A DNA stretch of 64,000 nt from Haliotis rubra (taxonomy: Eukaryota), in contig NW_025765443.1 of NCBI RefSeq assembly GCF_003918875.1, forward strand, positions 62,001 to 126,000, read 5' to 3'. The position numbers and the translations under genes were made by a program. Within the stretch, counting starts at the first letter, position 1. The number at the start of each line of letters is the position of its first letter. The notes under the pieces were generated by a model that had not been told where the DNA came from, ran no database searches, and worked only from the letters and a program-made list of their open reading frames with translations. Positions 1 through 62,588 of this stretch are shown here, piece by piece.

Positions 1-404
1 TAGCTGATGTCAAATGTCAACAAGAACTGACAGGAAACAACCTCAATATAGAGAACAGCAATTATCTCACATTCTGCGAGGTGCAGATATTTGGTAGGTA
101 AACATACACCTGTTAGCTGAACATTTTAATTTATTCTAACGTTGTTATAAAAAGTAATTCAGTTAGGTCACAAGCTGCCTAATCAACTACAGATAGGTTT
201 GCAGTTATTTTTCCTCATTGTGCTGTTTGTTTTACCCGGTAGACTGGAATGAACTGTTTCCACAGTTTTGTTCATCATTAATGAACGTGAGTTATGTATT
301 CATTTCATGTTCATTTTCAGTTTGCAGTGACGGCTGGTTTGGTGAGGACTGTGAAAAACAGTGTCACTGTTCACTAAACACAGAAATATGCGACAAGATC
401 ACTG

Positions 405-1010
405 CTAATATAACTACAATAGATTCAGCAGTAAAAACAGAACTTCCATTAGTTAATCTGAGGGAAAGGGTGTCTTCATCAGCGGCTGCTGATACCTTAT
501 CCGTGTAAAGGCTTTGGTAAGAGGAGTATTTATCTTTAATTTCTAAGAATGCTTGTGGGTACAATAAGGTATTTGTAACAGCTTTCTTCAGTCTCGCCAT
601 GTCTAAATTAACATCCGGCTGAATGGACTACCAAGGCGGTATTTCTGGAATGTTAAATGTTGATATGTTCTCAAGATTTAAATGAGCATCCCTGATATGG
701 GACTGTATAGGTATACCAAGAGGTGGGGTTGAGTTTGATTAATTATCATTTAAATCCTTGTAGGAAGGATTCAATGCACAGTTTAAACCTGGGTTAGATG
801 GATTTGAGTGAAGTTTAGCAGTATATTGAAGTGCGAGTTTCATTCTCCTTAACTTTAAACATGGTTCGTTTGCTTCAACATTCATACTCTCGACTGGGGA
901 AGTTCTGAATGCCCCCAGACACATTCTGATACCTTGATTATGAATGGTATGGAGCTCTCTAAGATACGATTTGCGGGTTGAACCATAAATATAAACCTGA
1001 AGTGTGCTTC
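405..1010 (-). mobile_element. Fragment of an I-group LINE (RT C-terminal/RNase H region) inside an EGF exon
   Basis: Minus-strand ORFs contain HNQGIRMCLGAFRTSPVES and SVFTAE, matching ORF2 motifs of the LINE at 43702-49960. Confidence 0.8.
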
Positions 1011-1420
1011 TCACTATATATTAAGCATCTCTTCTTTTCCCGGAATAACCGCGTGTGAGGTTTTTCTTTGCTCTCAGGTTTTACTTTTTGTAAGTAAGAC
1101 CTCTTCCCTGGTCTTACTTTTTCCTAACTCTGTATGAACATCAACATTCAAATGATATATGAGTGGTTGAAATCAACTGAAAAATATCGTTCAAGATCAA
1201 TTTCAAAGTGCAAATGGTTTTGCTAACAGGATTAAAACCGCTTCTTTCAGATTAATAAGCGGACACTCTACCTCACGGCCACCTAGCCGCCGAAGCCGTT
1301 TTGGTTGAATTATCTATTTATAGTTACTGTCTTTAAATTGATTTTACTTGCGCTCCAGTTATTGTTATGTAGCTTCATTAAATGATCATCTATATTGTAA
1401 TTATCCATCATTGACGGTTT

Positions 1421-1562
1421 ATATGTTAGGGAAAACACATCCCCTCGGTTTTGGTAGAGAATGTAAAACCGAGGGAGGAGGGAAATCCCTCGGGCTATTT
1501 CCTCCTCCCTCGGTTTTACATTCTCTACCAAAACCGAGGGAAGTCTTTTCCCCCTAGACATA
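1421..1562. repeat. Near-perfect foldback/MITE-like inverted repeat
   Basis: ccctcggttttggtagagaatgtaaaaccgagggaggagg is followed, after a short loop, by its reverse complement. Confidence 0.75.
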
Positions 1563-2105
1563 AAGCATCCTTAGTCAAGTTTGGATCTGACTTATGATCA
1601 ACCTCACATCGACTCTGTTACACTCAAATAGCGACACGACTTTGATGCACTCATTGAGTTATATGTTTATTTGTACTACACGCTATCTAAACCTGCCAAT
1701 GCCATGTTGATTTATTTATGTCGCATATTGCAAGAATTCCGATTTTGTCTCTTCATAACGGCAATTGCCGCTGATATCAAATCTTCAGGAAGCCTTTGGA
1801 AATTGTTTCGCACAATAAAATCAACTATTAGAAAATGAAAGTCATCCCTTCTGTTATACATTTCATGTTGAAAGTTATTATACATTTGACACAGTTGTTC
1901 AGAATGTTACATTTTGTTTCCTTAACTGCTTCTTTAATATGACTTCAGCTGTCCATGCCTAAAGTAACTTTTGGTTATTTATGTAACCAGGAGAAGTAAA
2001 AGGTATGTGTAAATCTTTATTAGGATAGACAGATAATTGCTGTGGACAACGGAATATTTTCCTTGTATCTTAGCAAAGTGAACATTCTAGACTTAATGTG
2101 AGCAG

Positions 2106-2245
2106 CTTGTCAGAAGAGACGCTATGGTATGAACCGTGCGTCAAAGTGTGGAAACTGTTTTCATAATCATTTGTGGAATAAGTTCACAGGAATATTCTGA
2201 GTGGGATGTACAAGAGAATGCTACCCGTGTTCAAATGTGGTACAG
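2106..2245 (+). pseudogene. Decayed EGF pseudo-exon of unit A
   Basis: cag|ct tgt cag aag aga cgc tat ggt atg aac cgt gcg tca aag tgt gga aac tgt = ACQKRRYGMNRASKCGNC, followed by Cys losses and TGA. Confidence 0.6.
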
Positions 2246-2543
2246 CTACGAGGCAAATGGTGCTTGAATATTGAAGGAGTTGTGAATGAGTGAATTAATA
2301 TTTAGCTTCACACAGGCAATATTTCAGATATTTCGTGACGAGATCAAATTACGCATTACCACAATTACATGTATTTTTTAAACCGGTCACGAAGGTACAG
2401 TAACACAACTACATTAACATCATACATTCAGCTGTCGGCAATTTTGACAAAATTAGCCATGAATTAAAGGAACATATATTCCACGATTAAAACTGTGATC
2501 TGATTAAATATGATTTGTTTGTGTTTCGGTTTCATTAATGGCC

Positions 2544-2749: not shown

Positions 2750-4720
2750 AACAGTATAATATAAAACATGTGGTCAAGGGACACAAGAGGCACGATCAGT
2801 TCAGTGGTAGTTAAAACGCATTTTAATGCTGTAGTCACTCAGACATACATCGATGAAACCATTGGCGACAAACTTAAGTCACTTAATCATTAATGGCCAA
2901 CTATTGAGCTAACGATAAAATTATGTGTACGTTTGTTAATTACTATACTGTTGTAATCTGCATGTGGTCAACAAATTTCTCTTTCACATTGCTCGGTCCC
3001 TTTGCCACCCTGGAAATAGAGGACGTTAAATGCAAACAATATTGACATCATGAAACATTTATATGCGTACACAGCATGTCCAGATGGTTACTATGGTCCT
3101 AACTGTGGCGTCCAGTGTGGCAACTGTGTGGATGGTGATGTTTGCATCAAGACAAATGGAACATGCCCTGGAGGATGTGCACCAGGATGGTTCAACGAAA
3201 AGTGTAATCAGCGTAAGTCAGCTGCAGTTATTGATAGCGGTAACAACACTATGGTATTTTTTTATGTCTTATGTGTGACTATTCAACAGGAACATTAGCA
3301 AACATATTCCAAATGTACTCTTACGTCTGTGGTGACGGGGAGAAAATATCAAACTACGTCGGTACAACCAAGGTGTAAACAATTGGAGAGCTCTGAAGTT
3401 TGGATACCTCTCGTTCAGATTTGACTTTATCGTGTATCACCATAGGAAATTCCTGGTTAGCATGAACAAGCTTTCAGCAATCATCAAATCAACGTATATA
3501 TACATAGGAACTTGAGCAAACATGTCACGAGTAATGGACAATATGCCCCAAATGTCCTTGACATTTGGTGTTGTATGCATCCTGTTCACACAACAGACAC
3601 ATTTCAACTGCATCACCGAGGCTTATTATTGTTCACTGGGACGTGTTTATGTAACAGCATGCCCAGATGGACGTTATGGTGCCAATTGTGCGTGTCCGTG
3701 TGGTCACTGTCTGGACACTGACGTCTGTGACAAGGTGACGGGGGCATGTCCTGGAGGAAGATGTCAGTCTGGATGGTGGCCAGATTTCTGTTCACAAGGT
3801 TGGTATTAAATCTTCACTTGTTCCTGTTAATATGTCTTAAACGCTTTGTCTTGTCGTTAATGGTTAATAATACTTTACAGCTTGCAGTGACGGTCGTCAT
3901 GGACACCGCTGTTAGTCTGAGTGTGGCCAATGTAAAGGAAACCTGCCTTGTAACAAGGTCAATGGAACATGTCAACAAGGATGTCGGCCAGGGTTTCAAG
4001 AACCCTTTTGTAAAGGTGGGATGCAATTTTGAATGTGACGGAAGTTGTAATTTTTCTACCCTGTCCACTGTCCTGCTTTCTCTTTATATATCTCTTGAGG
4101 GTAACTTGGTAAGACATCAAGGCAGCTGATATGAACCCCTTATTTATGTTTTGAAAGGTTGTACAGAGTGCCCGGCAACGCCAGGATACTCAAACCAAGT
4201 AGTGCCAGTTGCAGCAACACTTGGTACACTTCTCATCTTGGCTCTCATCGCTCTGTTGACATCCATCATTTACATTAGAAGGTACGGGGATGATAAGGTA
4301 TAAACTATATACATTGATATTCACTACGGGGAATGACATTTTGTGCCAATTTGACCAGAGATTATACATTGGAATTCATTTCTTACGGAGAATGATATAA
4401 TGTCTACATCATAATTGTAAGGATTAAAACATTGCAGACTGAAGATTCAACTGGATGCCTCACAAAAGAAACCCGAAGACAACTACATATCCCTAGACGA
4501 GAGAACCAGGGATCCAGTTGTGGAGAACACATATGAATACACTGACAATTCCAATCCTTATGTTAATGCAGTGGAAGTCCCCCAGGGCCGAATTTAAACT
4601 GAATTGTTGCATAAAGCGTCGTGTCTTAATGTACATTGATATAGAGTAGTCTTGTGCAAAGTAAATTGTTCTGAGTGTAGACAAGCGTAGTTTCTCACTT
4701 TAGGTCACTTTTAGAGTATA

Positions 4721-7079: not shown

Positions 7080-8687
7080 AACAACTTCCTGGTAGCCTGG
7101 ATATGTACTGGTGTTCAGACAGGCGACTGTGGGTTGTTGACGAGAGGTGAGTAGCGCAGGGACATAGTTTAGCTCTTACCCGTTGTATACTGAGTCAAAA
7201 AAGAAACTTCACAAAATGTATTTGAAAAATAATGGGTAATTTTTCTCTGATGATACATCTATGTATCCGAAATTGGATCCCTATCTTTCGACTCTAGAAA
7301 AACGTTAGCAAAACCCACTCAAACCCATCCATACGTCTTGCAAATTACGTTAGTGCCAAATCAGGTTTTGCATGTGCAGTCGACCCCTGAACTCGTGCCT
7401 TTCATGGCGGCTCATGGCCCAGGTCTACAGTTCCAGCATGATAATGTTCGGCCGCATACCGCGATGTTGACACGAAATCTCCTTCAAAACGCTGGAATCA
7501 ACGTCATGGACTGGCAATCGAGGTCCCCTGACCTTAGTCCAATAGATCACGTCACGTTTGGGATGCACTTGAGAGAAGGCTTCGTGGTCTTAGGAACCAA
7601 CCTCAGAATTTGCAGGAACTTGACGCTGCCTTGCAAGAGCAATGGCGCAGAATCCCCAACCACGTGTTCACAAGCATCAGGCAGTCGATGAGGAGACGTT
7701 GTTTGGCAGTGGTGAATGGGCGGGGCGGCCATACACGAAATTGAACTGAGAAATTTCGCATTTTTATTCTTGTGACTTGACATTCTGACCTCAGACCAGC
7801 AACCCGCATCTGATGGCGCTGGTGGAGAAATTACATGTTTTATCTATCGGGCTGTTGAAACATATTCAATTAGAACGGGTATTGCAGCAGTGAACTAAAC
7901 ATTTTGCACCGATCTATTAGGACTCTTAACATTAAGTATAATCCTGTTATTACTTAAATTCAATGCCCAGTGAGGTTTTCTTTATTGAATTGTTCATCTT
8001 TTCAACAACAATGAAAAATGTATCTATCCATCAACTGTATTCATTCAGTAGAGTATACCACAGGCCCATGATACAATAGCAAAACTGGAGTCCACGTCTC
8101 ACGGTGCCTGTTTGTTTCTAATCCACATTACTATGTATATATCAATGGTAAGCGTATTGACCGTGCATTCGTTCGTGTACGCCATTAACAGATTGACTTG
8201 GTGTTATCCAAATTTTCACACAAATGGTAATATTTGAACGTACTGAATCGTCTTTGTAGGCCATACATGGTGTCATGGTTGTTCGTCTGTGTCCTGCGCT
8301 GAGAATGTGGGTTGGAATAACGGATGGGACTCAACACACAACAACACTAAAATGTGTACTTTGTTTAGAAATTTTAATCTTAAATATAACATATGTTATG
8401 TTACATTTAACAACTTTTTGAAAGAAAATGTGTATTCATGTTTGAGTTGGCGAATATGTTTTATCAAAGTGTTAGGTTATAAATGCATTACATACAGTTC
8501 TACATTATGTATATGGTGACTTTATCTGAAAATGTCAACCAATTATCAGTTTGCAGTGATGAGTGGTTTTCTGAAGATTGTGACAAAGAGTGCAGGTGCC
8601 TTAGCAGTGCTGATGTATGTGACAAGCCCACTGGTCGCTGTTCTAGGGGATGTCTCCCAGGATATTATGGAACCGACCGCCAAACAG
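7080..8687 (+). pseudogene. Unit B remnant: putative non-coding first exon (donor after 7146), Tc1-associated deletion, then a single EGF exon 8550-8687
   Basis: The 7000-7180 region parallels 39030-39215 upstream of unit D. Sequence from ~7833 matches the intron after the FTP C-exon (19643+). The exon reads VCSDEWFSEDCDKECRC...GTDRQT. Confidence 0.65.
7189..7832 (+). mobile_element. Internally deleted Tc1-family element
   Basis: TA-tactgagtcaaaaaagaaact terminus; transposase remnant FQHDNVRPH...WQSRSPDLSPIDHV...GGHT. Confidence 0.8.
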
Positions 8688-8726
8688 GTTTGAGCATAGC
8701 TAGAATTTTAGTTAAATTTGATAAAG

Positions 8727-8971: not shown

Positions 8972-9028
8972 TTAAATTTGATAAAGAGTCTGCATATGCG
9001 TCAGATGTATGTTTCCTTTCCTGAATGA

Positions 9029-11445: not shown

Positions 11446-11571
11446 TATATAACAATTAGAACAATATATCCTTTCCCACTTTTTCCTAGCATTCATAGCC
11501 GTTCTGCAATCATCGGTATATCAAGGCGTATGTACACGTGGATTTGTCGAGGTGCTTTGATGAAGGCGGAT

Positions 11572-15327: not shown

Positions 15328-15329
15328 TA

Positions 15330-16038: not shown

Positions 16039-16209
16039 TTTGGTGACATGCTGTTCTAAAAGCGTCATAATTGGGTGACTTTGTCCATTCCTTTTGCATT
16101 TGATCATGCTTTGTGACAACAACCCATGAATTACACAAAATAAATGAGTGTCATTTGCTTGCACCGTTTGACACTACCACTACCATTTTAATCGTATGGA
16201 TGAACTCAC

Positions 16210-17246
16210 AGTCGTCGCCACGTAGATAAAGCCTGATGTGTTGTATCTTCTCTAGAACTGAAGTGTTCAGGTTCACAGTCCAGGTGGGATTTGTCTCAAT
16301 CATTGTATGAGCACATGTCAATGGAGAGCGATGGGCATCTGTTGTGGCTCTGCCGTCAACACCCAGTCCTGCTCCATAATCGTTTGCATTATTGTATAGA
16401 TTACTACTCTGACTACACGAGCTTCGCAGAGCAATATTTTCTGAAAACAGGAACACAACATAAGCATGACAAGTGGAATGAACACATACTAGTGACACGT
16501 TGACATGGCAATACCTATATGCATCTTCCTATACTCTAGTTTCTGACAGTACAGACCAAACCATCCCCTCTGACACATGTCCTCACCATCCATCTGACTA
16601 CAGGGAGTTGAGAGGAACGTGTCACAGAGCTCTGTGGTACTGCAGTGACAATGGATATCTGTTTGAAAAACATAGTTCTCCTTGTTACTTGGCATATTTA
16701 AAGCTCCATGCAGGTAGCAAAAGTAATGTAAGTCCCCATGGTTACTAGTATGGTGATCTACCTTCAGATGCTGGCGATCTATAGCTGTGTTTTATATTAT
16801 ATTGTCTTCTGTAATTACACTGATTTAGTTTTAACATGCTAGTTTTATGTTCATATCTGTGATACTCTAGTATTTGTACTGCACATCTTTGACAGGTTTA
16901 ACAGTTGACAATGTTTTCATTTTTGTATTGTATGAATTGTTTTCGTCACGATATGGCTGAGATATTGCCGATGTGACGTTAAATATTAACTCACTCACTC
17001 ACTCATATTTATAGGTTTGCTTGAGAACATAGTGGTAGGATTCGTGTGAGTCAGGTATGATTTATAGTCACATCGGCAATATTTCAGCCATATCGTGGAT
17101 GGGATTCGAGGATAGCAAAGTATTTGTGATTCAAGACTACAAATCTGCATATAGTTACACTTGTTTTACATTTCGTGAATAACGTCCCTACAAATGAGGG
17201 CCGGGGTGACACAGACCACAAGCAGTCCCACCCAGCACCATTCCAT
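16210..17246 (-). pseudogene. Unit B2, inverted 5' exons: signal peptide 17246-17192, Cys/EGF 16658-16539 (donor lost), FTP N-half 16440-16210
   Basis: MEWCWVGLLVVCVTPALI; CHCSTTELCDTFLSTPCSQ..CQRGWFGLYCQK; NIALRSSCSQSS..GVDG..CAHT..NPTWTVNL..RLYLRGDD. It is the inverted counterpart of 28090-29525. Confidence 0.9.
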
Positions 17247-17589
17247 GTTGGATATCTAAAACAGAGGCAAAGAAAGTGAAACTTTCCTGGTCATAGTCTC
17301 CTGACAACAAATATATTAACATGAGGGTCAGCATTTCATAAAACTTTGTAATTTTAGTGAATCCAAATGATATCAAAACAGGATTTGTGATACCTTTCAA
17401 GGCGCGGACATGTAGTCGGGATGCGATTGATCTAAATAATAAGAGTGCCAATTTCGTAAATATCAAGATGTTTGAATGACCGAAAGTTCACAGTACTTCA
17501 CGTATGCCAATAACAATTGCCATCTTATCTCTTACCATAACTGTAATGAAACAATCCCAATTGTTAAGTTGATATTTTACATTAGATAT

Positions 17590-17903
17590 CAACAAAACAT
17601 TAGGAAAATAGCTCTCACCATAGCCTTCCCCGAGTATTCACCGGACAGCCCACTTCCAAGTTGCGCGAACCTATTTCACTGCGCACGTGCTATGAGCGCA
17701 GCCCAGCTGTTGAAACCAGTTTTCCCCCGAAAAGTCGGGGGAACATTAGTGAATCGTTTGAACTCCGATTTCGCGCGGGTTTTTTCATCGCGTTATTTTT
17801 CAACTTTATAAGTTGAATTTGCATTTTTGATGATTTGTTTCGGTAAGTCCATACCGAAAGGTAGCAGAATCTGCAAAGTTGTGGTTTACGTTGCATGTGA
17901 CCT
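17590..17903 (+). mobile_element. Other arm of the Kolobok-like element
   Basis: Ends in gttgcatgtgacct-TTAA followed by the reverse-oriented continuation of the same LINE 3' UTR. Confidence 0.55.
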
Positions 17904-22606: not shown

Positions 22607-22665
22607 GGCACCCATGAAGGGCCACCTCCTCGTGGTGGGTGCTGGGTCACGCTAAGCGCCTTTCA
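22607..22665 (+). ncRNA. HDV-like self-cleaving ribozyme at the LINE 5' end (predicted)
   Basis: P1 GGCACCC/GGGTGCT (G1-U wobble), P3 ACC/GGT, L3 TCCTCGT, P1.1 CC/GG, J4/2 GCTAA, P2 TGAAGGGCC/GCGCCTTTCA. G1 is the first base after the TSD. Confidence 0.8.
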
Positions 22666-48600: not shown

Positions 48601-51600
48601 AGAATTAAATATAATACATACAAATCCTTATTTGCAGATGGGTCCAAGGATGGTGGCGCAGTAGCATGTGCCACTGTCATTGGATCCCGAACAATATCTT
48701 CTAGAATACCGGATAACAGCTCTATATTTACAGCAGAAGCAAACGCCATCTTAACAGCTCTTAAATATATTAATAAACACCGTAAATTTAAACAATATAT
48801 CATCTTTTCAGATTCTCTTTCGTGTCTTCAGGTTATTAAAAATCTTTCTTGCAAACATCCACTTTTATTAGAAATTATTGAATTGTACAATGAACTTGCT
48901 ACTGGCCAATGCGACTTGTTGGTTGCCCAGCCACGTTGGCATTTCTGGGAACACGATGGCTGATATTGCTGCTAAGGCAGCCCTCAACAAATCTGTGACA
49001 CCACATCGTATCCCATACTCTGATTATAAAGCCAGCATTAGAACATACATCCGCGATCTAATGCAAAAGAAGTGGGGCACCCAAGTAGGTATTAATAAAT
49101 TACATGCAATAAACCCTACATTGGTTACGCCTACTAGGGTTGTCAGTCCAGATTTGAAGAGGTCATTATGCGACGATGTCGCATTGGCCACACTAGATAT
49201 ACTCACCAATATTTACTGAAAGGCGAAGATCCTCCGTTTTGCATCCCTTGTGATGAAAGAATCACAGTCAAGCATGTCCTGCTTGACTGTGTTGAATATT
49301 CCATCACAAGGGATAAGTATTTTTAATTTCAAGACATTGAAGGATCTTTTTCATAATGTTAATTATCATTTAATAGTTGAATTTTTAAGAGAATTAGATT
49401 TGTGGACTGATCTGTAAATAGTTAAATATTATATTATTGGTAGTTTCTATTAGTAACTGAGATTGTTAGTGGATGTACCCTTAAAGGGGGTTGACGTAGC
49501 GTAAAATTATTGTCCTCCTGAGAGGGTACGTAAGTCCCAAAACCTTCAAAGTAAATTTAAACTTGCCAGGATTTTTAAACGTAGTATTCTTGTTCTATTA
49601 ATTTTGGCTAACATTTCTTCCAATCGCCAGCAGCTGAAGGGATGGTGTAAATCCAGCTAGGGCCCATGCAGGTAGCAAAAGTAATGTAAGTCCCCATGGT
49701 CCCTAGTATGGTCATCTACCTTCAGTTGTTGGCGATCTATTGCCTATTTTTATATTGTGCTGTCCCCTAAAGTTAAAAAGTTTTAGATTTAATTACTAGT
49801 TTTACATGTATATCTGTGATATTCTAGTTGTTTCACTGTCCTTCGTCGGCAGGTTTTTTATGATATCTGTATATATATTCTATTTAAATGTCAAATGTTC
49901 TCGTCACGATATGGCTGAAATATTGCCGATGTGACGTTAAATATTAACTCACTCACTCACTAGTACTGATATCTTAGTACGATATTGATAAATGGATATT
50001 TGTCAACAAACGTAATAATTTATAATTTGAGTCCATACCGACGGGGTGAACAGTAAATATCTGTGTGTTTGTGCAGCTTGTCTAGGTGGTTCTTATAGAA
50101 CTAACTGTGCCTCCAAGTGTGGAAGCTGCCTTAATGGTATCATATGTAGTAAGACAAACGGAATATGTCCTGGAAGATGTGCCTCAGGGTGAATGAGGGA
50201 CAACACTATGTTATGTCTGCAGCGTGAGTTCTTGGAAAAGTTGCATTTGGAAAGTTGCATTTGAAGTCAAATAGATATTGACTGAAAGGTATTAGCTGTG
50301 GTAGAACAAACGGTCCTGGGGAATGTCCATCAGAATGGCAGAGAGCCTACGAAGTAAGTCTGTATGATTAAAAGAAGGTTAAGCTTGTAGTTTACTACTA
50401 CATATTGTTTTTGTGTTTGCAGGATGTCCAGATGGTTCCTATGGTAGCAACTGCTCCTTTCAGTGTGGAAACTGTCTCAGTGGTGTCAGCTGTGACAAGA
50501 CAAACGGTACCTGTCCTGGAGGATGTGCAGCAGGATGGCAGAGTGATACAACATGTCTACAAGGTGGGTCTGTACGATTTGAAGAGATTGCTAACCCTGC
50601 AGAATACTGTTACTGGATGACTTCATTATGTGTATGTGTGTGTTTGCAGCATGTCCAGATGGTTCTTATGGTATCAACTGCTCCTCCCGGTGTGGAAACT
50701 GTCTGGATGGTGTCAGCTGTGACAAGGCCTTGGGAACATGCCCTGGAGGATGTGCAGCAGGATGGATGAATGACGGCACGTGTCTACAACGTGAGTAACA
50801 ATGGCGTATATTGCACTTAAGGGATATATATATAACAATTAGGTTAATGAACTGAAATTCAAATCTATAGCATATGTACACTCATGTGCCAAAATTGTTT
50901 CAATTTTCAAGATGGCAGATATTTCGGTCTCGTCCGGTTATGGATAATAAAGAATGTGTTGCTTACCTTATCGGTGTCCTGTTGCTTTTTCACATAGTTT
51001 TTCAACATACCAAACATTTTTTATTGGGTTAAAATCTGGACTCTGTGCTGGCCATGGTAGCTGAGGAATGTCATTCCTGCGTTTCCATGTTTCCGTCTCA
51101 AGGGACCGATGCATCGGTGCATTATCATCTTGAAACAGCCATGGTTTGTCAAGGAAATGCTTTACTACAACAGGCCACAAAAAGTTGTCAAGTGTATCAA
51201 TATACTTAGCACTGTTCATGTTCCCATCGACAAACACCAAACACCCCACACCGTAATACGTAATGCACCCCCACATCATCAACTTCATAGACAGCCCTAT
51301 TCCCTGAGTGAAATACCCGAGACACTCGACCCTCCATCTTTCTGATCACTTTCGCCACACTTTCACTCTTCTATCAGGTTTAGCAACAATAGTCATTTCA
51401 TCGGTAAAGATGACCCTTTTCCAGTCCCTATCAACATTCCAACGAATTTTTTCTCTACACCATGCCACAAGTTTTTTCCTGTTGACCTTTCGTATTCCCA
51501 GCTTTTTGCAAACAGTCCGTCGAACAAATCCCAGTGAATGTAAATTTCGTTGAACATGTTCTTTTTGGAAAAGGTTGTTGCACAGACTGATTAAAAATGT

Positions 51601-54600
51601 GAGTAATATCCTCCAAAGATTTCCGGCGATTAACTTTAACGATCCTCGAAAGTTGATAACTCCCCCGTGCTGTGATTTTTGCAGGTCTACCAGAATGACG
51701 TCTGCTTTCAATATTTTCACGTTTTCGATATCTTTTCAAAAATTTGCAAATAGTAGAAGGATGGATGCCCAATACTCTGAAACATCGGCTGACCTATATC
51801 CACCATTTATCATATTGATAATGGCCTGTTTTGTGTCATTACTCATCTCTTTTCCGTGTCCGGACATCAAATCCGTAACATATGCAGCTACTTTTTTCTT
51901 GTCAATTTAACCTACCATGAACCTTACAAGGAAAACCGTCGTGCATCATTGCCTATTGCATAAAGTGAGCTCATGACCTCACCATGTGTCCAGATAGGCT
52001 TTATCTTCAGCATTAGCATGTGCACTTGTAAATAACAGGGAAGGACAGAGTGTGACGAGGTGAAATACGAGGGGCGTCCTAAAAGTAGTCGGCCTAACTA
52101 TATTCTCAATGTCCAATGTTAGAAAAGCTTCCATTTCTGTTGGAAGAATCATTAGCAAATTTCACATATGTGGGTACAGTGGTTAACGAGATACTAGTCA
52201 TCACAATACATTAGGGTATAATATTTCTTTAAACATTTCAGAAAGTGAAAAATGATCTGTTAATTTGTACCTCTTGGAAAACGGTATGCCCTCAGATAAT
52301 ATGATATATAATATGTTCAGTATAGTATTTGATGACTGCCCGTCATAATCAGAATTCAAAGATTTGGATTGCTTGAATTATATTTAGACGGGGCTGTTTT
52401 TAAAGGACACCTCAAGTTTACTCTTTCAAAAGCATTGTGTCCAGATATTTAGGGTGGCACCGTTTACAATATATTGAGTGCTGACACTTGTGTGACCATT
52501 CAGAATTTAGTTTGAACTCTTTGAATCATGTATGAATAAGTGAAAACATTAAAATAAATTATGTCCGTATAATTACGTCATCTGAAAGGGGTTGGGTAGT
52601 GAATATCATGGGGGGAGTCACTTTAACAAGCGATTGTAGTTTCTAATTGCATTATTATGCACTTTAATATCTACGTTTGATTCTAGAGGACTTCTGCCTA
52701 TCTAATGTTTCATGCATACTTTGTTTCCTGAAGTTTATGATGCATGTATTGCAGATTTTGCGTTTTGGGGGATATAAAGATAAAGAGTCAAACAGAATGG
52801 GGATTGTGAGGCTGGAACATGTCAAATGCAATTTGCTTGAGGTAGACAGATAATATGTAGAAAAATAAAACTAGTGTCTGATTGTGGTCAATCCAGCCTG
52901 GCATGAAGCTTAGTCAATGGCACTCATGTAAAGAGCTGCCAGCAGCCATATCAAGAGACAGGCTATACAAACAAGGCCATAAACATTCCCGAAACAGGGG
53001 TAATATGAAAACTTGAACGTTATTATTATATAGTGTCGTAACGTTCTTTGTTTGATTCAAAGAATCATGTGCTGGACACCTAATGTACAGATACCTTATA
53101 TCAAAAACGACACTCGTAATTGTTTTGATCGGCATTCTAGAAGTTGGTGAGTAAATATGAAACATACAACTTTATGGATGACAAAGTGAGTTGTATGTTT
53201 CATAATACGATACTCGTACTTTGAACGATTTCATACTTTTTCTTACAGAGTGTGCCGTGGGAATGCATGGGATTAACTGTACAACAGATTGTGGGTGTAA
53301 GGAATGTAAGGCTTGTGACGCATACAGTGGTGAGACGATGCAACATATAACCTTACACAATGAAATGACTCGACCTACCAAACTGTAGCTTTATTTTATT
53401 GCATTAGTTTGGAATGATGGTTATTTTAAACTACTTCTCTATGTTTTAGATTTACGTTATAAATGCAACCTGCAAGGGTCACTATGTCTGATTTGATGAA
53501 ATGAAAACGGAAATGTCACGCACAATGCTACTTCAGATTGATACCTTATGCATACAGCTTTATAACAAGATTTCAAAGTCGGTTGTCTTTTCAAATATTT
53601 TTCTATTTTGTAACCTATGATTTGTTGTCCAAATTTTGTTAACCAAATTTAACTTTGAAAGGGTAATTTAAGATAAGGTTTAAGAATATGTACATGTTTA
53701 TGCATGAAATAATAAAGTCATTTTGATAACTATATGTTATGTATGTTCATATGGTTACAACGAAGATGAATTTCTCCACTAACTTGGGGGAAACATCTGC
53801 AAACCTTACGCAGATTAATTGCACGAGGATCGTGCATCAAATTGCTGAAAAGCATGTGCCACTATCGTGCATGTGAACAGCTGCGTTTTGGTGTAAAGTT
53901 TGATAAAAAATCGCCATTTCTCACCGAGTCTCATCATTTATTGAACACATGACAATAAAGTTTTCAACGTCACGAATTTGTTTTACAATACATCAGCTCA
54001 TGTATAAACAGTACCTTTGAAGTGTATGGGTTATTTTGCAAAATTTAGTTCAGAACAGTTGACTGAAGTAAGTGGCTACATTTACACTAGTTAGTCTAAA
54101 CGTTTGATGGGGAGTATATTAAATGACTTTGAGCTTCCACAATTTACAAAAGCTTTCAAAGTGATATAAACATTGTTGTAGATAGTCAGGCGTTTCAGCA
54201 AATAGAACAATATCATCTGCATACAACAGAACTAGCAACTTTATATATACATTCAAATCATTCTCAACCAACATATTTACAGTAGCAAGCCCATCTACGT
54301 TCGTTTGAAAGTAGCTCTACATCGTTTAAATAAATAGCAAAAAGAAATGGTGACAAGTTCTCGCCTTGTCTTACTCCTATCTTACATGGGGAAAAATATG
54401 TTAATTTACCATTATGTGGAATACGTGACTTTATTTGTTGATACTTATTAAAGATAAATTTGAAACATTTTCCGCGTATATTACTTTGTATCATTTTGAG
54501 GCAAACGCCATGTCCCCTTCTGTATCAAAAACATTACAAAATCAATAAAAGCGCAATAAAGGTTTTTATTGTAATTTTGATAATATCAAATAGAGCTTTG

Positions 54601-56561
54601 AGAGTATAGACATGGTCAATTGTTGAGTAATTTTGGCGAAAGCCAGCTTGAGCTTCACACATAATCTAAATAGATTTATAAATTACATTCACAGTTCTCT
54701 ATTTATCTGACCACATTTGTGTGTTTTTTCTGACCCCTACAGAGAAGTGTTCCGGCTGGGGAATCCCAGTGACAGCTGTTCTTGGTGTGTTGCTGATCTG
54801 CACAGTGACTGGTGGAACCATATACATCAGACGGTAGTATATTTTGCCTCTTTCGTACAAATACCCACATGTTTCCGAACAGCATTGTATATTGAAATAG
54901 TATCTTGCGGCTATGTAATCACCTGATAGGAATGATAGGCAATGGTTCGTTAAACTATACTTAACTGTGACACAAACGTTTCTTAAGAGAATGCTAACAG
55001 TCATTTTAAACATTGTGCTGAAAAATATGTTTAAGTGATAGCCTCTTCTTGAGCAAGCAAACACTTATGTTTTATCCTCTTTACATGCCGATCCAATTAG
55101 CTATGCAGTGTCAAATATAAAGTTATTTTGTGTTGCCCATTCTTGTTGGATTGGTTCTTTGTGCATTAAATCGTAATTTCTGCTCTGATTGGCGAACTCA
55201 GAACTTGGTCCAAGTAGGCTTCAAGTATACTGATGATCTGTTTTGTTCAATACCCACACAAGCGACAAATATAACTTCTTCTCCAGCGTGTCCAAATGAA
55301 ATACTTTAGAGTACAATTTTACCAACAAGATCTGATTCTTTCTCCGAAGTTGTTGGATTCAGGTTGCAGCATTCGGGGCCTTAGTACAGTCTTCGAAATG
55401 TTTCATGGTAAACATTTAGATGCCCTTTCCAAATTTGACGCTTAGACGAAAATGATGCCCCATGCACGCAGTTCCTTATTTTGTACCACATGTTCCACGT
55501 TTGTAAGTGAACACTTGTCTCTGCAGGTGTTTGCTGCAGGTGCACTGGTGTGGAATGATAGGCTCACCTTTTCACCTGTTACTAGCTGGTATAATATACA
55601 TTCGATAGTAATTCAGAAACACAGGCTGTTGATATTGTCGGAACCGCACAATCAACTCGAGTCGACTGTCCAGATTTCGTATGAATATAGAAAGGCTTTC
55701 GCCGCTTGTGAAACAATATTTCAGAGGTTTGCAAACATTCCAAAATATCTGGTGCACACAGCAAAAACGACTCGACCCCGTCCTAATTCATTTGGCTGAG
55801 AACACCCTTTGACAATATGCTGTTTTGGTTTCAAAATAATAGAGTTCATCTGCATGGACTCTCAGTTTGCAATGTGTAAATAATTTGTTTATGTAGTGAA
55901 GTGATTATGGGTACAACTTCATCGCCATACTGAATGAACTTTGACTTTAGATATTCGTGATGTCAGAAAATCATTCTTCCTCCGGGAAAACCTAACTCTT
56001 GCAAGAAATAGGGCTCCAAACTTTGCATTCATAAGGTATTTCCTATTCTAAATGGTTGTGCACTAGTTCTTGCAGAACATTTCAGAATTCTTTGAGCTTC
56101 AGCTTCTAGATTTAAGGACGGGATCCATTATTAGCAGGTGTCGGGCGAACATTCACAAATAAAAAACGTTTGAAATCATAAAGTATACAATACCTACATT
56201 TCTTAACCTATTAAGATCCTTTTTGAGCCGTTGACCTACACAATACTTTCATGTACTATTAGCCTCAGTGTCTAAGTTTTGTTTTAACTGTGACACAATA
56301 TAAAAGTTTCCACAGCTTAAATCAAGGGCCTTTTTGTTTGTTTCACGTTAGGGTTCTGTTTTCTGAATTTTACCAAATAGCAATAACTATTTTCCCGTCA
56401 AATTACTGAAACACCTGGAGAGCTTGAAGACAAAAAAGAGAGCGGAACACTATGTGACACTTGATGAGAGGACAAAGACAACAGAAAGTACCTACGAACA
56501 TATCGACAATGCAACGCCTTACTACAATACAGTCAATCATCTTCAGGATGAAACTTTATGA
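39664..56561 (+). CDS. Unit D: F-type lectin/multi-EGF/TM/ITAM-like receptor (start codon uncertain). Exons 39664-39727, 40372-40485, 40634-40861, 42805-42990, 43284-43421, [50077-50223 with TGA], 50423-50563, 50650-50790, 53249-53329, 54743-54833, 56381-56561
   Basis: Paralogous exons with AG/GT borders and matching phases; TM WGIPVTAVLGVLLICTVTGGTIYIRR; tail EHYVTL-x10-YEHI..PYYNTV. Functionality depends on skipping 50077-50223 and on an upstream ATG. Confidence 0.75.
40060..40160. repeat. Minisatellite, ~30-bp unit x3
   Basis: ggca(g/c)agggacgttat(t)aagataat(t)gc repeated. Confidence 0.8.
42185..42431 (+). mobile_element. SINE-like family S1
   Basis: S1 body and actcactcac tail. Confidence 0.8.
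43702..43760 (+). ncRNA. HDV-like self-cleaving ribozyme at the LINE 5' end (predicted)
   Basis: GGCACCT A TGAAGGGCC ACC TCCTCGT GGT GGGTGCT GG GTCAT GCTAA GCGCCCTTCA; differences from 22607 preserve pairing. Confidence 0.8.
46728..46889 (-). mobile_element. tRNA-derived SINE (family S2) nested in LINE ORF2
   Basis: 12-bp TSD acatagcaaata; head ggggcggtggggtagcctcgtggttaaagcg...ggttcgattccc. Confidence 0.9.
50877..52060 (-). mobile_element. Decayed Tc1-family element
   Basis: Frameshifted fragments SGRP, IFTDE, FQDDNAPMH, WPAQSPDFNPIKNVW; right boundary uncertain. Confidence 0.85.
53900..54660 (-). mobile_element. Decayed LINE reverse-transcriptase fragment (different clade; CR1/RTEX-like)
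   Basis: QAGFRQNYSTIDH, GVRQGENLSPFLFAIYLND and LLYADDIVL on the minus strand. Confidence 0.75.
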
Positions 56562-59439: not shown

Positions 59440-60283
59440 GGATTCAATACAAAGTTTGTTTATCTACGGAATCATCTGTTTAGAGACATATACATGTATG
59501 TCAACCTTCCATATCAACATGTAAATGGTATATTCAGTGTCAATGGTCATATGTTTATATTGCTCTATCTAGTCAGATAACAATAGCACGGCAATGTGTT
59601 TTCCAGCATCAGAAAGAGCAGAAAGAGAGACATTGTGAGAACCAATATTTGTTCATCATACACCCGAGCCTTTAAGGCTTTACAATTTCAATTGCAGTGC
59701 ATGTTTAAGTGCACCGCCTTCAATGTATACAGGAAAACCTTTTGTATTGATCATGTGATCTGTCATGCGTGCCATCCTCTTCCTGGTTGCCGTACACTGA
59801 GATCGTGCTCGATGCGCGATGGCCGTGTGCATAGTGAGTACTTGAATATATTGTGTTTGACGACTTCTCAGTGTATATCCACGACAGACTAAATGTTTTA
59901 TATTAGATTCATATTGCTTGACGCTAATCATGTTTATATTCCCTCAACGGAGCACCGTGTGTACGTTTAAACTGCAGTGAACAGCTATCTCATTGCTCAG
60001 ACCGACATAGGACGTTTAACGGCTCTTCAGGTGTACAATGAAAGCTGAGTGTCGTCATAGGCGACACATAACGGTAATAGCTATGTCGTCATCATGCGTA
60101 TGACGTTAAGCAGTTAGTGACAATAGCGGGAGACGTAAAACGTAGTCATGGGTGACAGTAAGGTTACGTTTGTGACGTCATCGTGTTTTTGACGTCATAG
60201 TTAGAAACAATAGTGGTGGACGTGTATGCATTATGGTTTCAGTGCACAAATACATACTGAGTTACATTGAGAAAGTTACAAAA

Positions 60284-60900
60284 TTATACTTTTGTATTAA
60301 GCTTAGGTTTAAACAGCCTTATGAACATTTGTTCTTTTTCCATCCGTAATTGTTTATCATTGTTAAACAATTGATAAAACGGAAAGATAGTAAACTGGCC
60401 ATTCCCGCATTCATCAATGTGTTTGCTTACATTTATACATCGCACATTAGGATCTCGAATTTGTTGTCTGTGTACAGTGACTCGGTCCTTTAGTTGCATT
60501 CCAGTTTCTCCAATATAATACTCACCACATCCCGCACATGTTAAAACATATATAACATTTTTGCTGCGGCAGTTCATGTTGGTTTTGATAGTAAATAGTT
60601 TGTCTTCACAAAATGTAAATTTACAGTCTTCAGTTATGATTGAACAAGTTCCACATCGAGGTGTGTGACATTTTGTTACACTGACAGCGTTTGTATCTTG
60701 TGAATATTTAGATGGACAAAGGATTTGTTTTAGATTTTTAGGCTGCCTAGTGCTTCGTATAAATTTAGTCTTGGATAAACCTTTTTTCATAGTTTCACTT
60801 TTATACAAAATTGGAAGATTTGCTTTTATAATGGGCATAATTGTACAGTTATTAGGATTGTAGGTACAAACAAATGGAAGAATGTCCACCTCACCTCTGT
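60284..60900 (-). mobile_element. Penelope-like element 3' fragment (Zn-finger linker + GIY-YIG endonuclease)
   Basis: LPFVCTYNP..RQPKNLKQIL..CHTPRCGTC..NVIYVLTCAGCGEYYIGETG..R..H..LN. Confidence 0.85.
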
Positions 60901-61075
60901 TTCTTTGGTTTACTGTGTCTCTCTTTATGAACTGCATTTTCAACATACCCCACGTGGATATCCTTGTAGCTGAAGATACGTCTTCAATTCTTCTAATCTT
61001 GCACTTCTTGTGTCCACATCCGAAACAATAGTACATTCTGGTTTTATTTATCTATGTGATATATATATATATATT

Positions 61076-61118
<43 letters not shown>

Positions 61119-61985
61119 ATATATATCGTGGAGTAGCGAGCAAATAGCCAAAATAACGAGAAAATACTTAATATTCCAAGAACGTGACTGAATTAACGAG
61201 AAAATTTAGTTGAAGTAGTAATTAAGAAATTACCGCAAAACCGATGGCAATCATGTTCCAAAGTCAACAGCTTCGAGTTCCCCTCAAACGTAAAGTACAT
61301 GTGCAACAATGATAAAACAGTTTTCCTGTAAACGCTTGTTGATGTTCGGAGTCGCCCTTACAGGAAAAGAAATGTTAGTGGTCAAGATACACGAGCGCCA
61401 AGTTCCTCGGAGCTTGATCTGTACAATGCATTTACATCATGCATGTACATGATAGATGTTTGTAAACGAACGAGGTGAACGTGACATGTAACTCCGCCTC
61501 TCTTTATTTATATTAGTATATTAAGGGTTTGCTCGTTGTTTAATCCAACACTCATCATGAGTATTTGAGCGTGTGAGTTTTAACTCATTAGAAAGTCATC
61601 ACCTGAGTCAACATTTGTTTGTTTGTTATTAAACTCAGCAATTTTTCAGTTATTTGGCAGCGATCTGTAAATAATCGAGACATTCCAGTAACTGACATCA
61701 TAAGCATAGCTCTATACAGCTGGGATACGATGACATGCATCAACTATGTTAACCAGTCTGACCACTCGATCCTGTTAGTCGCCTTATACGACAAGCATGG
61801 GTTTGCTTAAAATCCAATTACAGTATCTTAAGTGCTTTGGGATAGTATTGCATATTATTAATATTTCGAATTTGTCTCTCAGACTAAAAGAATGTTTCAA
61901 TATTCGAGTACTGAAAGCCTAAAGCTCATCAAATCAGGTTTGTCTGTGTTTTTATCACGATTATAAATGTTTGTTTTTCATTTAG

Positions 61986-62588
61986 GTACACGGCATCGGT
62001 TGGTTCTGGAAAGGACTACTAGCGGTTTGTGTCTTTGTGACTCTCACTGGTAAGGACTTTATTTACAGAATATGAAAGTGTAAATATCTCATATATTTGT
62101 TGGCAGGTATTAATAAGTAGTAATCACTTTCAATCGGGTTAATGTATCTCTTTTCAAACAGATGCCGAGTGTCAATGTAACACCACTACTGCCTGTGCCG
62201 TGTTCCCCTCTACTCCCTGTAGCCAGGTCGGTGATCCAGACAGATGTCAGGAAGGATGGTTCGGTAACTACTGCCAGAAACGTGGGTGTGGGGTAGATTG
62301 GTAGATGTAGTATCACGTTAAGAAGCCGCCGATATTTGTGAGACGCATTATGTATATATATTTCAGAAAACACTGCTTTGCGGAGATCTTGTAACCAGAG
62401 TAGCACATTGTGGAATAATGCAGGCCGGCATGGAGCCGGAGTTGGTGTAGACGGCATTGTCACCACAGATGCCAGGAACGAGCCATGTGCCCATACAAAT
62501 AATGAGTCAAATCCCACCTGGACTGTGAAACTGAACACTTCAGTTCCAGAGAAGATACAACACATCAGACTCTATATCCGTGAAATGC
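61986..62588 (+). CDS. Unit E: 5' exons of another receptor paralog (61986-62049 signal, 62162-62281 Cys/EGF, 62367-62588 FTP N-half); continues beyond the window
   Basis: GIGWFWKGLLAVCVFVTLT; DAECQCNTTTACAVFPSTPC..CQEGWFGNYCQK; NTALRRSCNQSS..GVDG..CAHT..RLYIREM; open frames and intact splice sites; start codon not located. Confidence 0.8.

What the first reader, a model, noticed from the sequence alone, without database searches (positions are those of the whole stretch)
1..62588. Tandem family of F-type-lectin/EGF/ITAM-like membrane receptors, a candidate diversified glycan-sensing immune receptor system
Seen: six head-to-tail paralogous units share one exon plan (signal, Cys/EGF, two-exon FTP domain, EGF stalk, TM, Tyr-motif tail), in states from apparently intact (C) to truncated or inverted. 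Known: F-type lectins bind fucose via a His/Arg/Arg triad and are mostly soluble; Draper/MEGF10/CED-1 engulfment receptors combine EGF stalks with ITAM signalling but use an N-terminal EMI domain. Inference: a lectin head on a Draper-like stalk and tail, evolving by birth and death, suggests a phagocytic or self/non-self recognition family. Automated annotation would probably just call it MEGF10-like.
Basis: partly seen in the sequence, partly recalled or inferred. Interest (0 to 1): 0.85.

Follow-up and report, generated by a model that had tools for sequence, protein, structure and literature searches.

The report
Abalone lectin-EGF-ITAM receptor gene array
This stretch of blacklip abalone DNA holds six tandem, mostly damaged copies of a gene for a membrane receptor that joins a fucose-lectin head with variable binding loops to a Draper/MEGF10-like stalk and an ITAM signalling tail, a plausible but untested sugar-sensing receptor family that databases label only as "MEGF10-like".

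Summary
The window is Haliotis rubra contig QXJH01001496.1. It carries six paralogous units (A, B, B', C, D, E) built on one exon plan: signal, small EGF-like module, F-type lectin domain (FTLD) split over two exons, 8-Cys EGF stalk, TM, and a short Tyr-motif tail.

The head is a true FTLD:
- It matches MsaFBP32 by sequence (E=1.5e-17).
- The AlphaFold model (pLDDT 95.5) has F-type lectins as its 11 best PDB matches (TM 0.82-0.87).
- The His/Arg/Arg triad is conserved.
- Paralogues vary almost only in loops CDR1, CDR2 and CDR4 around the sugar pocket.

The tail fits the ITAM consensus in 25 of 26 distinct Haliotis family tails. There is no EMI domain and no NPxY motif.

Every unit in this window has at least one lesion, including "intact" C. 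NCBI annotates only truncated models here. Full-length paralogues elsewhere confirm the link from FTLD to TM and tail. At least 45 Haliotis proteins belong to the family, named MEGF10/11/6, draper-like and similar. Some relatives carry tyrosine-phosphatase tails.

An immune or phagocytic role is inferred only; no RNA run was listed. The scan noted this family before on other DNA of this genome (s1-328016, s1-341745). I rate it a new variant of known kinds, of moderate interest.

The parts
1..93 (+). Unit A, lectin exon 2 (E4), 3' part only, cut by the window start
   Evidence: tblastn; donor GT at 94. The peptide resembles the 'IADV' subfamily (P0170, P0054).
321..402 (+). Unit A, EGFa exon (E5); only the 5' half is recognisable and the 3' half with its cysteines is lost
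3075..3212 (+). Unit A, stalk EGF exon E6 (AG/GT, phase 1/1)
3658..3798 (+). Unit A, stalk EGF exon E7
3881..4015 (+). Unit A, stalk EGF exon E8 with an in-frame TAG at 3913
4158..4281 (+). Unit A, transmembrane exon
   Evidence: 92% identical to unit C
4438..4597 (+). Unit A, tail exon. It has YISL, but the second motif is YEYT, so there is no ITAM match; PYVN is present
8550..8687 (+). Unit B, solo EGFa exon with its last Cys changed to Arg, inside the duplicated block 7832-9848
16145..18183 (-). Unit B', inverted block holding E1 (17246-17192), E2 (16661-16539; donor TA instead of GT) and E3, lectin exon 1 (16440-16210). This is NCBI LOC124270065 (P0004, 154 aa)
19381..19565 (+). Unit B', lectin exon 2 (E4) with a 1-nt deletion near its start (frameshift)
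20376..20513 (+). Unit B', EGFa exon (E5) with two cysteines lost; no stalk, TM or tail exons follow
28469..28523 (+). Unit C E1: ATG plus signal peptide, donor GT
28786..28893 (+). Unit C E2: 6-Cys EGF-like module. The conserved acceptor gives a start at 28786; an alternative AG 3 nt upstream would start the exon at 28783
28993..29211 (+). Unit C E3: lectin exon 1, with CDR1, CDR2, His and the first Arg
31304..31489 (+). Unit C E4: lectin exon 2, with the second Arg and the near-invariant half of the domain
32302..32439 (+). Unit C E5: EGFa
33407..33544 (+). Unit C E6: stalk EGF. NCBI's model P0177 reads through its donor and stops in the intron
34025..34162 (+). Unit C E7: stalk EGF whose acceptor is AA instead of AG (AG in units A and D)
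34242..34376 (+). Unit C E8: stalk EGF
34473..34580 (+). Unit C E9: stalk EGF. The normal 3' end seen in P0164 and P0054 has decayed to a stop, leaving only a cryptic GT donor at 34581
34771..34894 (+). Unit C E10: transmembrane exon
35026..35149 (+). Unit C E11: tail with the ITAM match YLSL-x12-YEHI; the stop comes before the PYxN motif of paralogues
39673..39727 (+). Unit D E1: signal-peptide exon in which the conserved ATG is ATC
40363..40485 (+). Unit D E2: the conserved acceptor CAG is CAA, and an in-frame AG lies 6 nt downstream. NCBI's gene call starts at the internal ATG at 40431
40634..40861 (+). Unit D E3: lectin exon 1
42805..42990 (+). Unit D E4: lectin exon 2
43284..43421 (+). 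Unit D E5: EGFa
50077..50223 (+). Unit D stalk EGF exon G1 with an in-frame TGA at 50190
50423..50563 (+). Unit D stalk EGF exon G2
50650..50790 (+). Unit D stalk EGF exon G3
53249..53329 (+). Unit D short E9-like EGF exon (AG/GT, phase 1/1); its use is uncertain
54743..54833 (+). Unit D transmembrane exon
56402..56561 (+). Unit D tail with the ITAM match YVTL-x10-YEHI plus PYYN. The conserved acceptor is lost, and an in-frame AG allows a start at 56423
61995..62049 (+). Unit E E1: the conserved ATG is ATC
62159..62281 (+). Unit E E2: EGF-like module
62367..62588 (+). Unit E E3: lectin exon 1; the rest of the unit lies beyond the window
22607..27891 (+). LINE copy between B' and C, with broken ORF1, endonuclease and RT ORFs
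43702..49961 (+). LINE copy filling intron 5 of unit D, with ORF1, APE endonuclease, RT and RNase H ORFs
50968..51772 (-). Tc1/mariner remnant in a stalk intron of unit D

Best explanation
The window is part of an old tandem array in the blacklip abalone genome. Its paralogous genes encode type-I membrane receptors with this layout: signal peptide, one small EGF-like module, one F-type lectin domain (FTLD), a stalk of MEGF/laminin-type 8-Cys EGF modules (one phase-1/1 exon each), one TM helix, and a cytoplasmic tail of 40-55 residues carrying an ITAM-consensus motif.

Shown:
- The architecture and the FTLD fold.
- Conservation of the fucose-binding His/Arg/Arg triad.
- A CDR4 loop like that of the fucose-binding C-terminal domain of MsaFBP32: one residue shorter than in the eel lectin AAA, with Leu or Phe in place of the Cys-Cys bridge.
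- Variability confined to the loops around the sugar pocket.
- ITAM conservation across deep subfamilies.
- Decay of the local copies.

Inferred mechanism: the head binds terminal fucose-like sugars, and the variable CDR1, CDR2 and CDR4 loops give each paralogue a different extended glycan specificity. Multivalent ligands cluster the receptor. A Src-family kinase phosphorylates the two ITAM tyrosines, and a Syk/Shark-type tandem-SH2 kinase docks and drives uptake or cell activation. Relatives with a similar ectodomain but tyrosine-phosphatase tails could oppose this signal.

In this window the array is mostly a graveyard. Only C, and possibly D, could still make a receptor, and then only by skipping damaged in-frame exons.
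For: Organism and annotation.

Units and exon plan. The unit C model has canonical splice sites. Its E2-E6 junctions equal NCBI's P0177. It is colinear with the full-length paralogue P0164, 81% identical over 470 aa.

Lectin head:
- phmmer against PDB gives 3CQO at E=1.5e-17 and 1K12 at 2e-4, with the triad aligned.
- The AlphaFold model has pLDDT 95.5.
- The top 11 Foldseek hits are all F-type lectins, TMq 0.82-0.87.
- H43 and R72 are invariant and R78 nearly invariant in 38 sequences.

Variation: column entropy is 1.8-2.1 bits in the CDR1, CDR2, post-His and CDR4 loops against 0.4-1.0 elsewhere. pN/pS is 0.88 in the loops against 0.14 in the framework.

Tail: the ITAM pattern occurs in 25 of 26 distinct tails, against 0.35 expected from shuffles. 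The consensus follows PMC6219719. ITAM-Syk signalling has been shown in a mollusc (PMC6994640).

Fucose binding by a CDR4 without the Cys-Cys bridge is described in PMC5712786.

Phosphatase-tailed relatives.
Against: - There is no expression evidence: no RNA run was listed.
- NCBI's models in the window are truncated and lack signal peptides (P0004, P0177, and a 379-aa call for D).
- Every unit has a lesion.
- Pfam PF22633 stays below its gathering score for this subfamily (24-25 bits against 27.8).
- The canonical motif with R-x-D-x4-R and the Cys-Cys bridge is not met.
- A loop pN/pS near 1 fits relaxed constraint as well as diversifying selection.
- YxxL/I motifs can also be endocytic sorting signals.
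- The ITAM spacing of 10-12 residues in this subfamily is at the upper limit of the consensus.
- No ligand, cell type or kinase partner is known.
Confidence: 0.6

Rival explanations
1. The local array is non-functional. All six units in this window are pseudogenes or fragments, working family members lie elsewhere in the genome, and the window only records birth-and-death turnover.
For: Each unit carries lesions:
- A: nonsense codon at 3913, loss of the E5 3' half, and a broken second ITAM motif.
- B: a solo exon.
- B': inversion, a TA donor and a frameshift.
- C: an AA acceptor, a decayed E9 end and a shortened tail.
- D: ATG changed to ATC, two lost acceptors, and a nonsense codon at 50190.
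- E: ATG changed to ATC.

In addition, dN exceeds dS with lost cysteines in the EGFa exons of B and B', and NCBI annotates only truncated products here.
Against: - The damaged exons of C and D are phase 1/1, so skipping them keeps the frame.
- C keeps its ATG, signal peptide, head, TM and ITAM.
- The framework pN/pS of 0.14 among the units shows long purifying selection.
- D and E may start translation in an upstream exon, as P0010 appears to do.
Confidence: 0.35
2. The family is real but not an ITAM-signalling immune receptor. It would be an endocytic, scavenger or adhesion receptor, or a sensor of dietary, settlement or gamete glycans, and its YxxL/I motifs would act as AP-2 sorting signals.
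For: - YxxL/I is also the YxxPhi sorting motif (general knowledge).
- The tails are short and lack NPxY.
- F-type lectins in oysters serve as sperm bindins that also vary in their loops (PMC5712786).
- Abalone graze on fucose-rich brown algae (general knowledge).
- No immune expression data exist.
Against: Two tyrosine motifs are kept at ITAM spacing in 25 of 26 tails, across subfamilies whose intervening sequence differs (8 against 10-12 residues). Relatives with phosphatase tails point to phosphotyrosine signalling. A YxN motif is present in 20 of the 26 tails.
Confidence: 0.25
3. The head no longer binds sugar. Like discoidin/FA58C domains, it would use the jelly-roll fold for protein or lipid contacts.
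For: - The canonical CDR4 (R-x-D, Cys-Cys) is absent.
- Only some calcium-site residues are recognisably conserved.
- Pfam scores are sub-threshold.
- Bivalve relatives P0203 and P0210 have lost the His.
Against: His, Arg and Arg are kept in all 38 aligned domains. The CDR4 length and its hydrophobic residue match the MsaFBP32 C-domain, which binds fucose in the crystal.
Confidence: 0.15

Closest known systems
F-type lectins AAA (1K12) and MsaFBP32 (3CQO)
   Same: Same jelly-roll fold (TMq 0.85-0.87) and the same His/Arg/Arg triad. Variability is concentrated in CDR1 and CDR2, as in the eel isoforms. The CDR4 resembles that of the MsaFBP32 C-domain.
   Different: Those lectins are soluble serum proteins made of one or two lectin domains. 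Here there is a single domain at the tip of an EGF stalk on a membrane receptor. There is no Cys-Cys bridge. The gene has an intron inside CDR4, between the two arginines.
Draper / MEGF10 / CED-1 engulfment receptors
   Same: Type-I receptors with many 8-Cys atypical EGF modules, a single TM and an ITAM-consensus tail (as in Draper). Databases name the abalone proteins after them.
   Different: The N-terminal EMI domain is replaced by an EGF-like module plus an F-type lectin domain. There is no NPxY motif. The tail is much shorter. The family is tandemly expanded rather than single-copy.
Oyster sperm bindin (F-type lectin repeats)
   Same: A mollusc F-type lectin family with strong diversification of binding-site loops and conservation of the triad in many isoforms.
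   Different: Bindin is a secreted acrosomal protein made of lectin repeats. It has no EGF stalk, TM or tyrosine-motif tail.
Oyster CgIgR (ITAM receptor that signals through CgSyk; PMC6994640)
   Same: A mollusc type-I receptor with an ITAM tail. It shows that ITAM-Syk signalling and phagocytosis control exist in the phylum.
   Different: Its ectodomain is five Ig domains, not lectin plus EGF. The two are not homologous.
Drosophila Furrowed/CG9095 and other mosaic membrane F-type lectins
   Same: An F-type lectin domain on a transmembrane protein, combined with other modules.
   Different: The partner modules are CCP and C-type lectin domains. No MEGF-type stalk or ITAM tail, and no tandem expansion, is reported for them.

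Membership tests
F-type lectin domain (FTLD) | F-type jelly-roll fold | tested here: met
   The AlphaFold model of unit C's domain has pLDDT 95.5. Foldseek ranks 1-11 are all F-type lectins: 3CQO TMq 0.87 with rmsd 1.7, and 1K12 TMq 0.85.
F-type lectin domain (FTLD) | Significant sequence similarity to established members | tested here: met
   phmmer against PDB gives MsaFBP32 at E=1.5e-17 (both of its domains) and AAA at E=2.2e-4.
F-type lectin domain (FTLD) | Curated profile hit above threshold (Pfam PF22633/PF00754) | tested here: inconclusive
   The window's subfamily scores 23-25 bits against a cut-off of 27.8 (P0010, P0008, P0164). Single exons score 19 bits. More distant relatives pass: P0199 32.5, P0197 45.3 and P0201 73.8 bits.
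F-type lectin domain (FTLD) | His/Arg/Arg triad that binds the fucose 4-OH | tested here: met
   H43 and R72 are invariant and R78 is at least 90% conserved in the 38-sequence alignment A2. They align with His52, Arg79 and Arg86 of AAA.
F-type lectin domain (FTLD) | Canonical CDR4 motif R-x-D-x4-R/K with adjacent Cys-Cys | tested here: not met
   The two Arg are 6 residues apart, not 7. There is no Cys-Cys, and the Asp is variable. The length and the hydrophobic Leu/Phe match the MsaFBP32 C-domain, which still binds fucose.
F-type lectin domain (FTLD) | Fucose binding | not testable with these tools
   This needs recombinant protein tested on glycan arrays or by fucose inhibition.
MEGF10 / Draper / CED-1 | N-terminal EMI domain | tested here: not met
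   No EMI hit appears in any family member scanned. Its place is taken by an EGF-like module plus the lectin domain.
MEGF10 / Draper / CED-1 | Stalk of atypical 8-Cys EGF repeats | tested here: inconclusive
   The Cys pattern fits. Pfam EGF_PEAR1L, EGF_STAB1-2 and laminin-EGF hits are sub-threshold. The best solved relative is the Tie2 EGF region, E=1e-7.
MEGF10 / Draper / CED-1 | NPxY motif for CED-6/GULP | tested here: not met
   None of the 26 distinct tails has NPxY.
ITAM-bearing receptors | YxxL/I-x6-12-YxxL/I in the cytoplasmic tail | tested here: met
   25 of 26 distinct Haliotis tails match, against 0.35 expected from shuffles. Units C and D match; unit A does not.
ITAM-bearing receptors | Tyrosine phosphorylation and recruitment of a tandem-SH2 kinase | not testable with these tools
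   This needs biochemistry. The precedent in molluscs is CgIgR-CgSyk (PMC6994640).

The most novel reading that the evidence does not exclude
Abalone, and perhaps molluscs generally, have a germline-diversified paired-receptor system. Tandem genes would share a lectin/EGF ectodomain with hypervariable sugar-binding loops and couple it either to an ITAM tail (activating) or to tyrosine-phosphatase domains (inhibiting). That would be a glycan-reading analogue of vertebrate paired immune receptors, built from a Draper-like chassis.
Probability: 0.15. Interest if true: 0.8.

Novelty: new variant of a known kind. Interest (0 to 1): 0.55.

Why it matters
F-type lectins are known mainly as soluble opsonins or sperm bindins, and Draper/MEGF10 as single-copy corpse-engulfment receptors with an EMI head. 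Here the two are fused and tandemly expanded. The sugar-binding triad is kept while the surrounding loops differ between paralogues, and an ITAM is conserved across subfamilies.

If the proteins work as the architecture suggests, this would be a membrane-bound, germline-diversified glycan recognition system wired directly to phosphotyrosine signalling. That bears on how molluscs, which lack antibodies, achieve recognition breadth, and on disease resistance in farmed abalone.

There is also a practical point. Genome annotation hides the family under names such as MEGF10/11/6, draper-like, PEAR1-like, delta-like and fucolectin-5-like. Immunome surveys that rely on names or on Pfam thresholds will therefore miss or misfile it.

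Tried and rejected
- **RNA evidence.** The look-up of sequencing runs listed no RNA run for unit C. Read laying could therefore not be used, and no splice junction is confirmed by reads.
- **Pfam on single exons.** This gave only weak hits because the lectin domain is split over two exons. Database paralogues and NCBI's own model of unit C were used instead.
- **Rfam.** A scan of the whole window at gathering threshold found nothing.
- **Second locus.** An exact look-up of P0010's locus failed.
- **Whole-exon dN/dS.** Values among the units (0.1-0.6, one pair at 1.0) give no exon-wide positive selection. Only the loop versus framework partition was informative.
- **Variable heads spliced to shared constant exons.** I considered this because P0008 joins the head of one unit to the stalk and phosphatase exons of the next. 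I set it aside for this window: B' is partly inverted, and C and D each have their own TM and tail exons.
- **Haplotig of the 897-kb contig.** I considered whether the window is an alternative copy of that contig. P0168 is very like unit C, but the binding loops differ too much for alleles. This is left open.
- **Shell-matrix role.** The one abalone shell protein annotated with a fucolectin domain is a different CCP/chitin-binding protein.

Full report
**Origin of the window.** A lectin-exon peptide from the window retrieved proteins that are exact products of this DNA. P0004 (XP_046561041, LOC124270065) and P0177 (253 aa, named 'fucolectin-5-like') are both Haliotis rubra proteins on a contig of 168,535 nt. 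The contig is QXJH01001496.1 of GCA_003918875.1, and window position equals record position minus 62,000. The window contains no N.

**Checking the observation.** I compared candidate exon peptides (tblastn), the window against itself (blastn), and unit C's exons against the window. The results show:
- four copies of lectin exon 1 (16440-16210 on the minus strand; 28993-29211; 40634-40861; 62367-62588);
- four copies of lectin exon 2 (1-93, 19381-19565, 31304-31489, 42805-42990);
- five copies of the first EGF exon after the lectin domain (EGFa);
- three stalk clusters;
- transmembrane and tail exons, three of each (the copies in unit D were found by frame scanning).

**Gene model of unit C.** Unit C has 11 exons with canonical AG/GT sites, with one exception described below. 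Exons E2 through E9 both begin and end in phase 1. E1 starts at the ATG, the TM exon ends in phase 2, and the tail exon ends at the stop. The result is a type-I membrane protein of about 445-490 residues. NCBI's model P0177 uses the same E2-E3-E4-E5-E6 junctions. The whole model is colinear with the annotated full-length paralogue P0164, at 81% identity over 470 residues, through to the transmembrane segment and tail.

**State of the copies**:
- **A.** It has lost the 3' half of EGFa, has a TAG at 3913 in a stalk exon, and its second ITAM motif reads YEYT.
- **B.** It is a single EGFa exon inside a recent duplicate (7832-9848, 89-95% identical to 19643-21770) and has lost a cysteine.
- **B'.** Its first three exons lie in an inverted block (16145-18183). 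It also has a TA donor, a 1-nt deletion in lectin exon 2, and lost cysteines in EGFa. It has no 3' exons.
- **C.** It keeps the ATG, signal peptide, head, TM and ITAM. However, the acceptor of E7 is AA (AG in A and D), the normal 3' end of E9 has decayed into a stop, and the tail ends before the PYxN motif of its paralogues.
- **D.** It has ATC at the conserved start and CAA at the conserved E2 acceptor, with an in-frame AG 6 nt downstream. It has a TGA at 50190 in the first stalk exon and has lost the tail acceptor. A LINE (43702-49961) and a Tc1 remnant (50968-51772) lie in its introns.
- **E.** It has ATC at the start and is cut by the window end.

All damaged stalk exons are phase 1/1, so skipping them preserves the frame. 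The annotation has a 379-aa gene call that starts at the ATG at 40431 in unit D. My reconstruction without the stop-bearing exon gives 372 residues. The 7-residue difference equals the segment just upstream of the alternative tail acceptor. That match is an inference, not a look-up.

No unit is demonstrably intact, so the window is mostly the decaying part of a live family.

**The head.** Separate exons give only weak Pfam hits, and full-length relatives score 23-25 bits on PF22633 against a cut-off of 27.8. Other tests are clear:
- The domain matches the solved F-type lectin MsaFBP32 at E=1.5e-17 and the eel lectin AAA at 2e-4.
- An AlphaFold model of unit C's domain, built from a 38-sequence alignment, has pLDDT 95.5.
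- Its 11 best PDB matches are all F-type lectins, with TMq 0.82-0.87.
- The residues aligned with His52 and Arg79 of AAA are invariant in the 38 sequences, and the one aligned with Arg86 is conserved in at least 90%.

CDR4 is one residue shorter than in AAA and lacks the Cys-Cys bridge. Its length and its hydrophobic Leu or Phe match the C-terminal domain of MsaFBP32. In that domain Phe220 replaces the bridge, and L-fucose is still bound in the crystal (PMC5712786).

**Variation between paralogues.** Among 21 Haliotis domains, column entropy is 1.8-2.1 bits in the segments that align with CDR1, CDR2, the loop after the His, and CDR4. It is 0.4-1.0 bits elsewhere. These loops encircle the sugar pocket in AAA and also vary among eel and oyster isoforms (PMC5712786).

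For five lectin exon 1 sequences (four from the window, one from the second locus L002), pooled pN/pS is 0.88 in the loops and 0.14 in the framework. That shows a strong difference in constraint. It does not prove positive selection.

Lectin exon 2 is an island of 94-96% identity inside introns that do not align, and its dS is low (0.16 against 0.65 for exon 1 in the C-D pair). This suggests exon-limited gene conversion or constraint on synonymous sites.

The phase-1 intron lies inside CDR4, between the two arginines.

**Stalk and tail.** Each stalk exon encodes one 8-Cys EGF module. The nearest solved relative is the Tie2 EGF region. No EMI domain is found. The ITAM consensus, as defined for Draper in PMC6219719, occurs in 25 of 26 distinct Haliotis tails, against 0.35 expected from shuffled tails. 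The spacing is 10-12 residues in the window's subfamily and 8-9 in the more distant Haliotis relatives. No tail has NPxY, and 20 of the 26 have a YxN motif. These tails are related to one another, so the count reflects conservation, not independent origins.

**The wider family.**
- A search with P0010 found 47 Haliotis entries (of 63 hits in all) from four species. In H. rubra there are about 23 clusters on at least 11 contigs. Their names include MEGF10/11/6, draper-like, PEAR1-like, CED-1-like and delta-like.
- In the chromosome-level assemblies, several members sit on a single chromosome.
- A tree of the lectin domain places B', C, D and E in one subfamily that has members from all four species. 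Unit E groups with two H. asinina genes (SH-aLRT 98), so the array predates speciation. Unit A's fragment resembles a second subfamily.
- Bivalve 'MEGF10/CED-1-like' proteins (P0203, P0210) have a degenerate jelly-roll head without the His, an EGF stalk and a similar tail. The chassis is therefore older than gastropods.
- Some relatives carry tyrosine-phosphatase domains in place of the short tail: P0008 in H. rubra, and others in Potamilus, Mizuhopecten and Plakobranchus. The P0008 model itself joins one unit's head to the next unit's stalk and phosphatase exons. However, a second head lies about 7 kb upstream of those stalk exons, which precede the phosphatase exons.

**Interpretation.** The architecture, the lectin identity, the loop-focused variability, the ITAM conservation and the birth-and-death state of the array are shown. 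The following steps are inferred:
- fucose-type binding;
- paralogue-specific glycan specificity;
- clustering-driven ITAM phosphorylation;
- Syk-type recruitment leading to uptake or activation.

ITAM-Syk signalling does exist in a mollusc (PMC6994640). Rival readings remain open: the window's copies may all be dead, the tyrosine motifs may be sorting signals in an endocytic or adhesion receptor, or the head may no longer bind sugar.

**Novelty.** Five full-text searches found no paper that describes this family. The library searched covers only open-access papers and bioRxiv preprints. Mosaic and transmembrane F-type lectins are known in general (PMC5712786). First-stage notes of this scan describe the same architecture, and an ITAM-versus-phosphatase pairing, on other pieces of this genome (s1-328016, s1-341745). 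My protein-level results agree with those notes. I file the finding as a new variant of known kinds and rate its interest as moderate.

Noticed in passing
window 31304-31489 and 42805-42990 (also 19381-19565): Lectin exon 2 is 94-96% identical between units, while the flanking introns do not align. Its dS (0.16) is a quarter of that of lectin exon 1 (0.65) for the same gene pair. The cause may be exon-limited gene conversion or constraint on synonymous sites.
   Followed up: partly
window 29211/31304 (and the same junction in B' and D): The phase-1 intron that splits the lectin domain lies inside CDR4, between the two sugar-binding arginines. In the fish MsaFBP32 gene the introns lie at the bottom of the barrel (PMC5712786).
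   Followed up: no
L002:10001-58805 (H. rubra contig QXJH01000466.1): P0008 (1155 aa, 'receptor-type tyrosine-protein phosphatase mu-like') combines this family's head and EGF stalk with two phosphatase domains. The model takes its head from one unit (about 23.7-26.9 kb) and its stalk and phosphatase exons from the next (46-59 kb), where a second head sits at 39-42 kb. It may be chimeric or may reflect alternative heads.
   Followed up: partly
window 22607-27891 and 43702-49961: Two diverged copies (72-88% identical) of one LINE family.
   Followed up: partly
window 9987-11178 (-), 14139-15110 (+), 50968-51772 (-): Three Tc1/mariner copies. The one at 14139-15110 has an uninterrupted 323-aa transposase ORF with HTH_Tnp_Tc3_2 and DDE_3 hits.
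   Followed up: partly
window 60284-61036 (-): A 250-aa ORF with a GIY-YIG nuclease domain (E=4e-8), as found in Penelope-like retroelements.
   Followed up: partly
window 11565-13725: A tandem duplication of a unit of about 968 bp, with copies 98% identical, between units B and B'. A related copy lies at 22259-22606.
   Followed up: no
window 2544-2748, 4721-4966, 8725-8972, 20551-20797, 39270-39481, 42220-42437, 61633-61811: A dispersed repeat of about 210 bp (SINE- or MITE-like) found seven times in both orientations. Most copies lie in introns of the receptor units.
   Followed up: no
P0009 (H. asinina XP_067684846): A gene model named 'putative nuclease HARBI1' begins with this family's signal, EGF-like and lectin exon 1 sequence and then runs into a HARBI1-like transposase. 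It is probably a transposon insertion into a family member.
   Followed up: no
P0203 (Mizuhopecten), P0210 (Ostrea): Bivalve proteins named MEGF10 or CED-1-like also have an N-terminal jelly-roll head that lacks the sugar-binding His, followed by an EGF stalk, a TM helix and a tail with YxxL motifs, including a YETLDERTR stretch close to the abalone tail. The chassis therefore looks mollusc-wide.
   Followed up: partly
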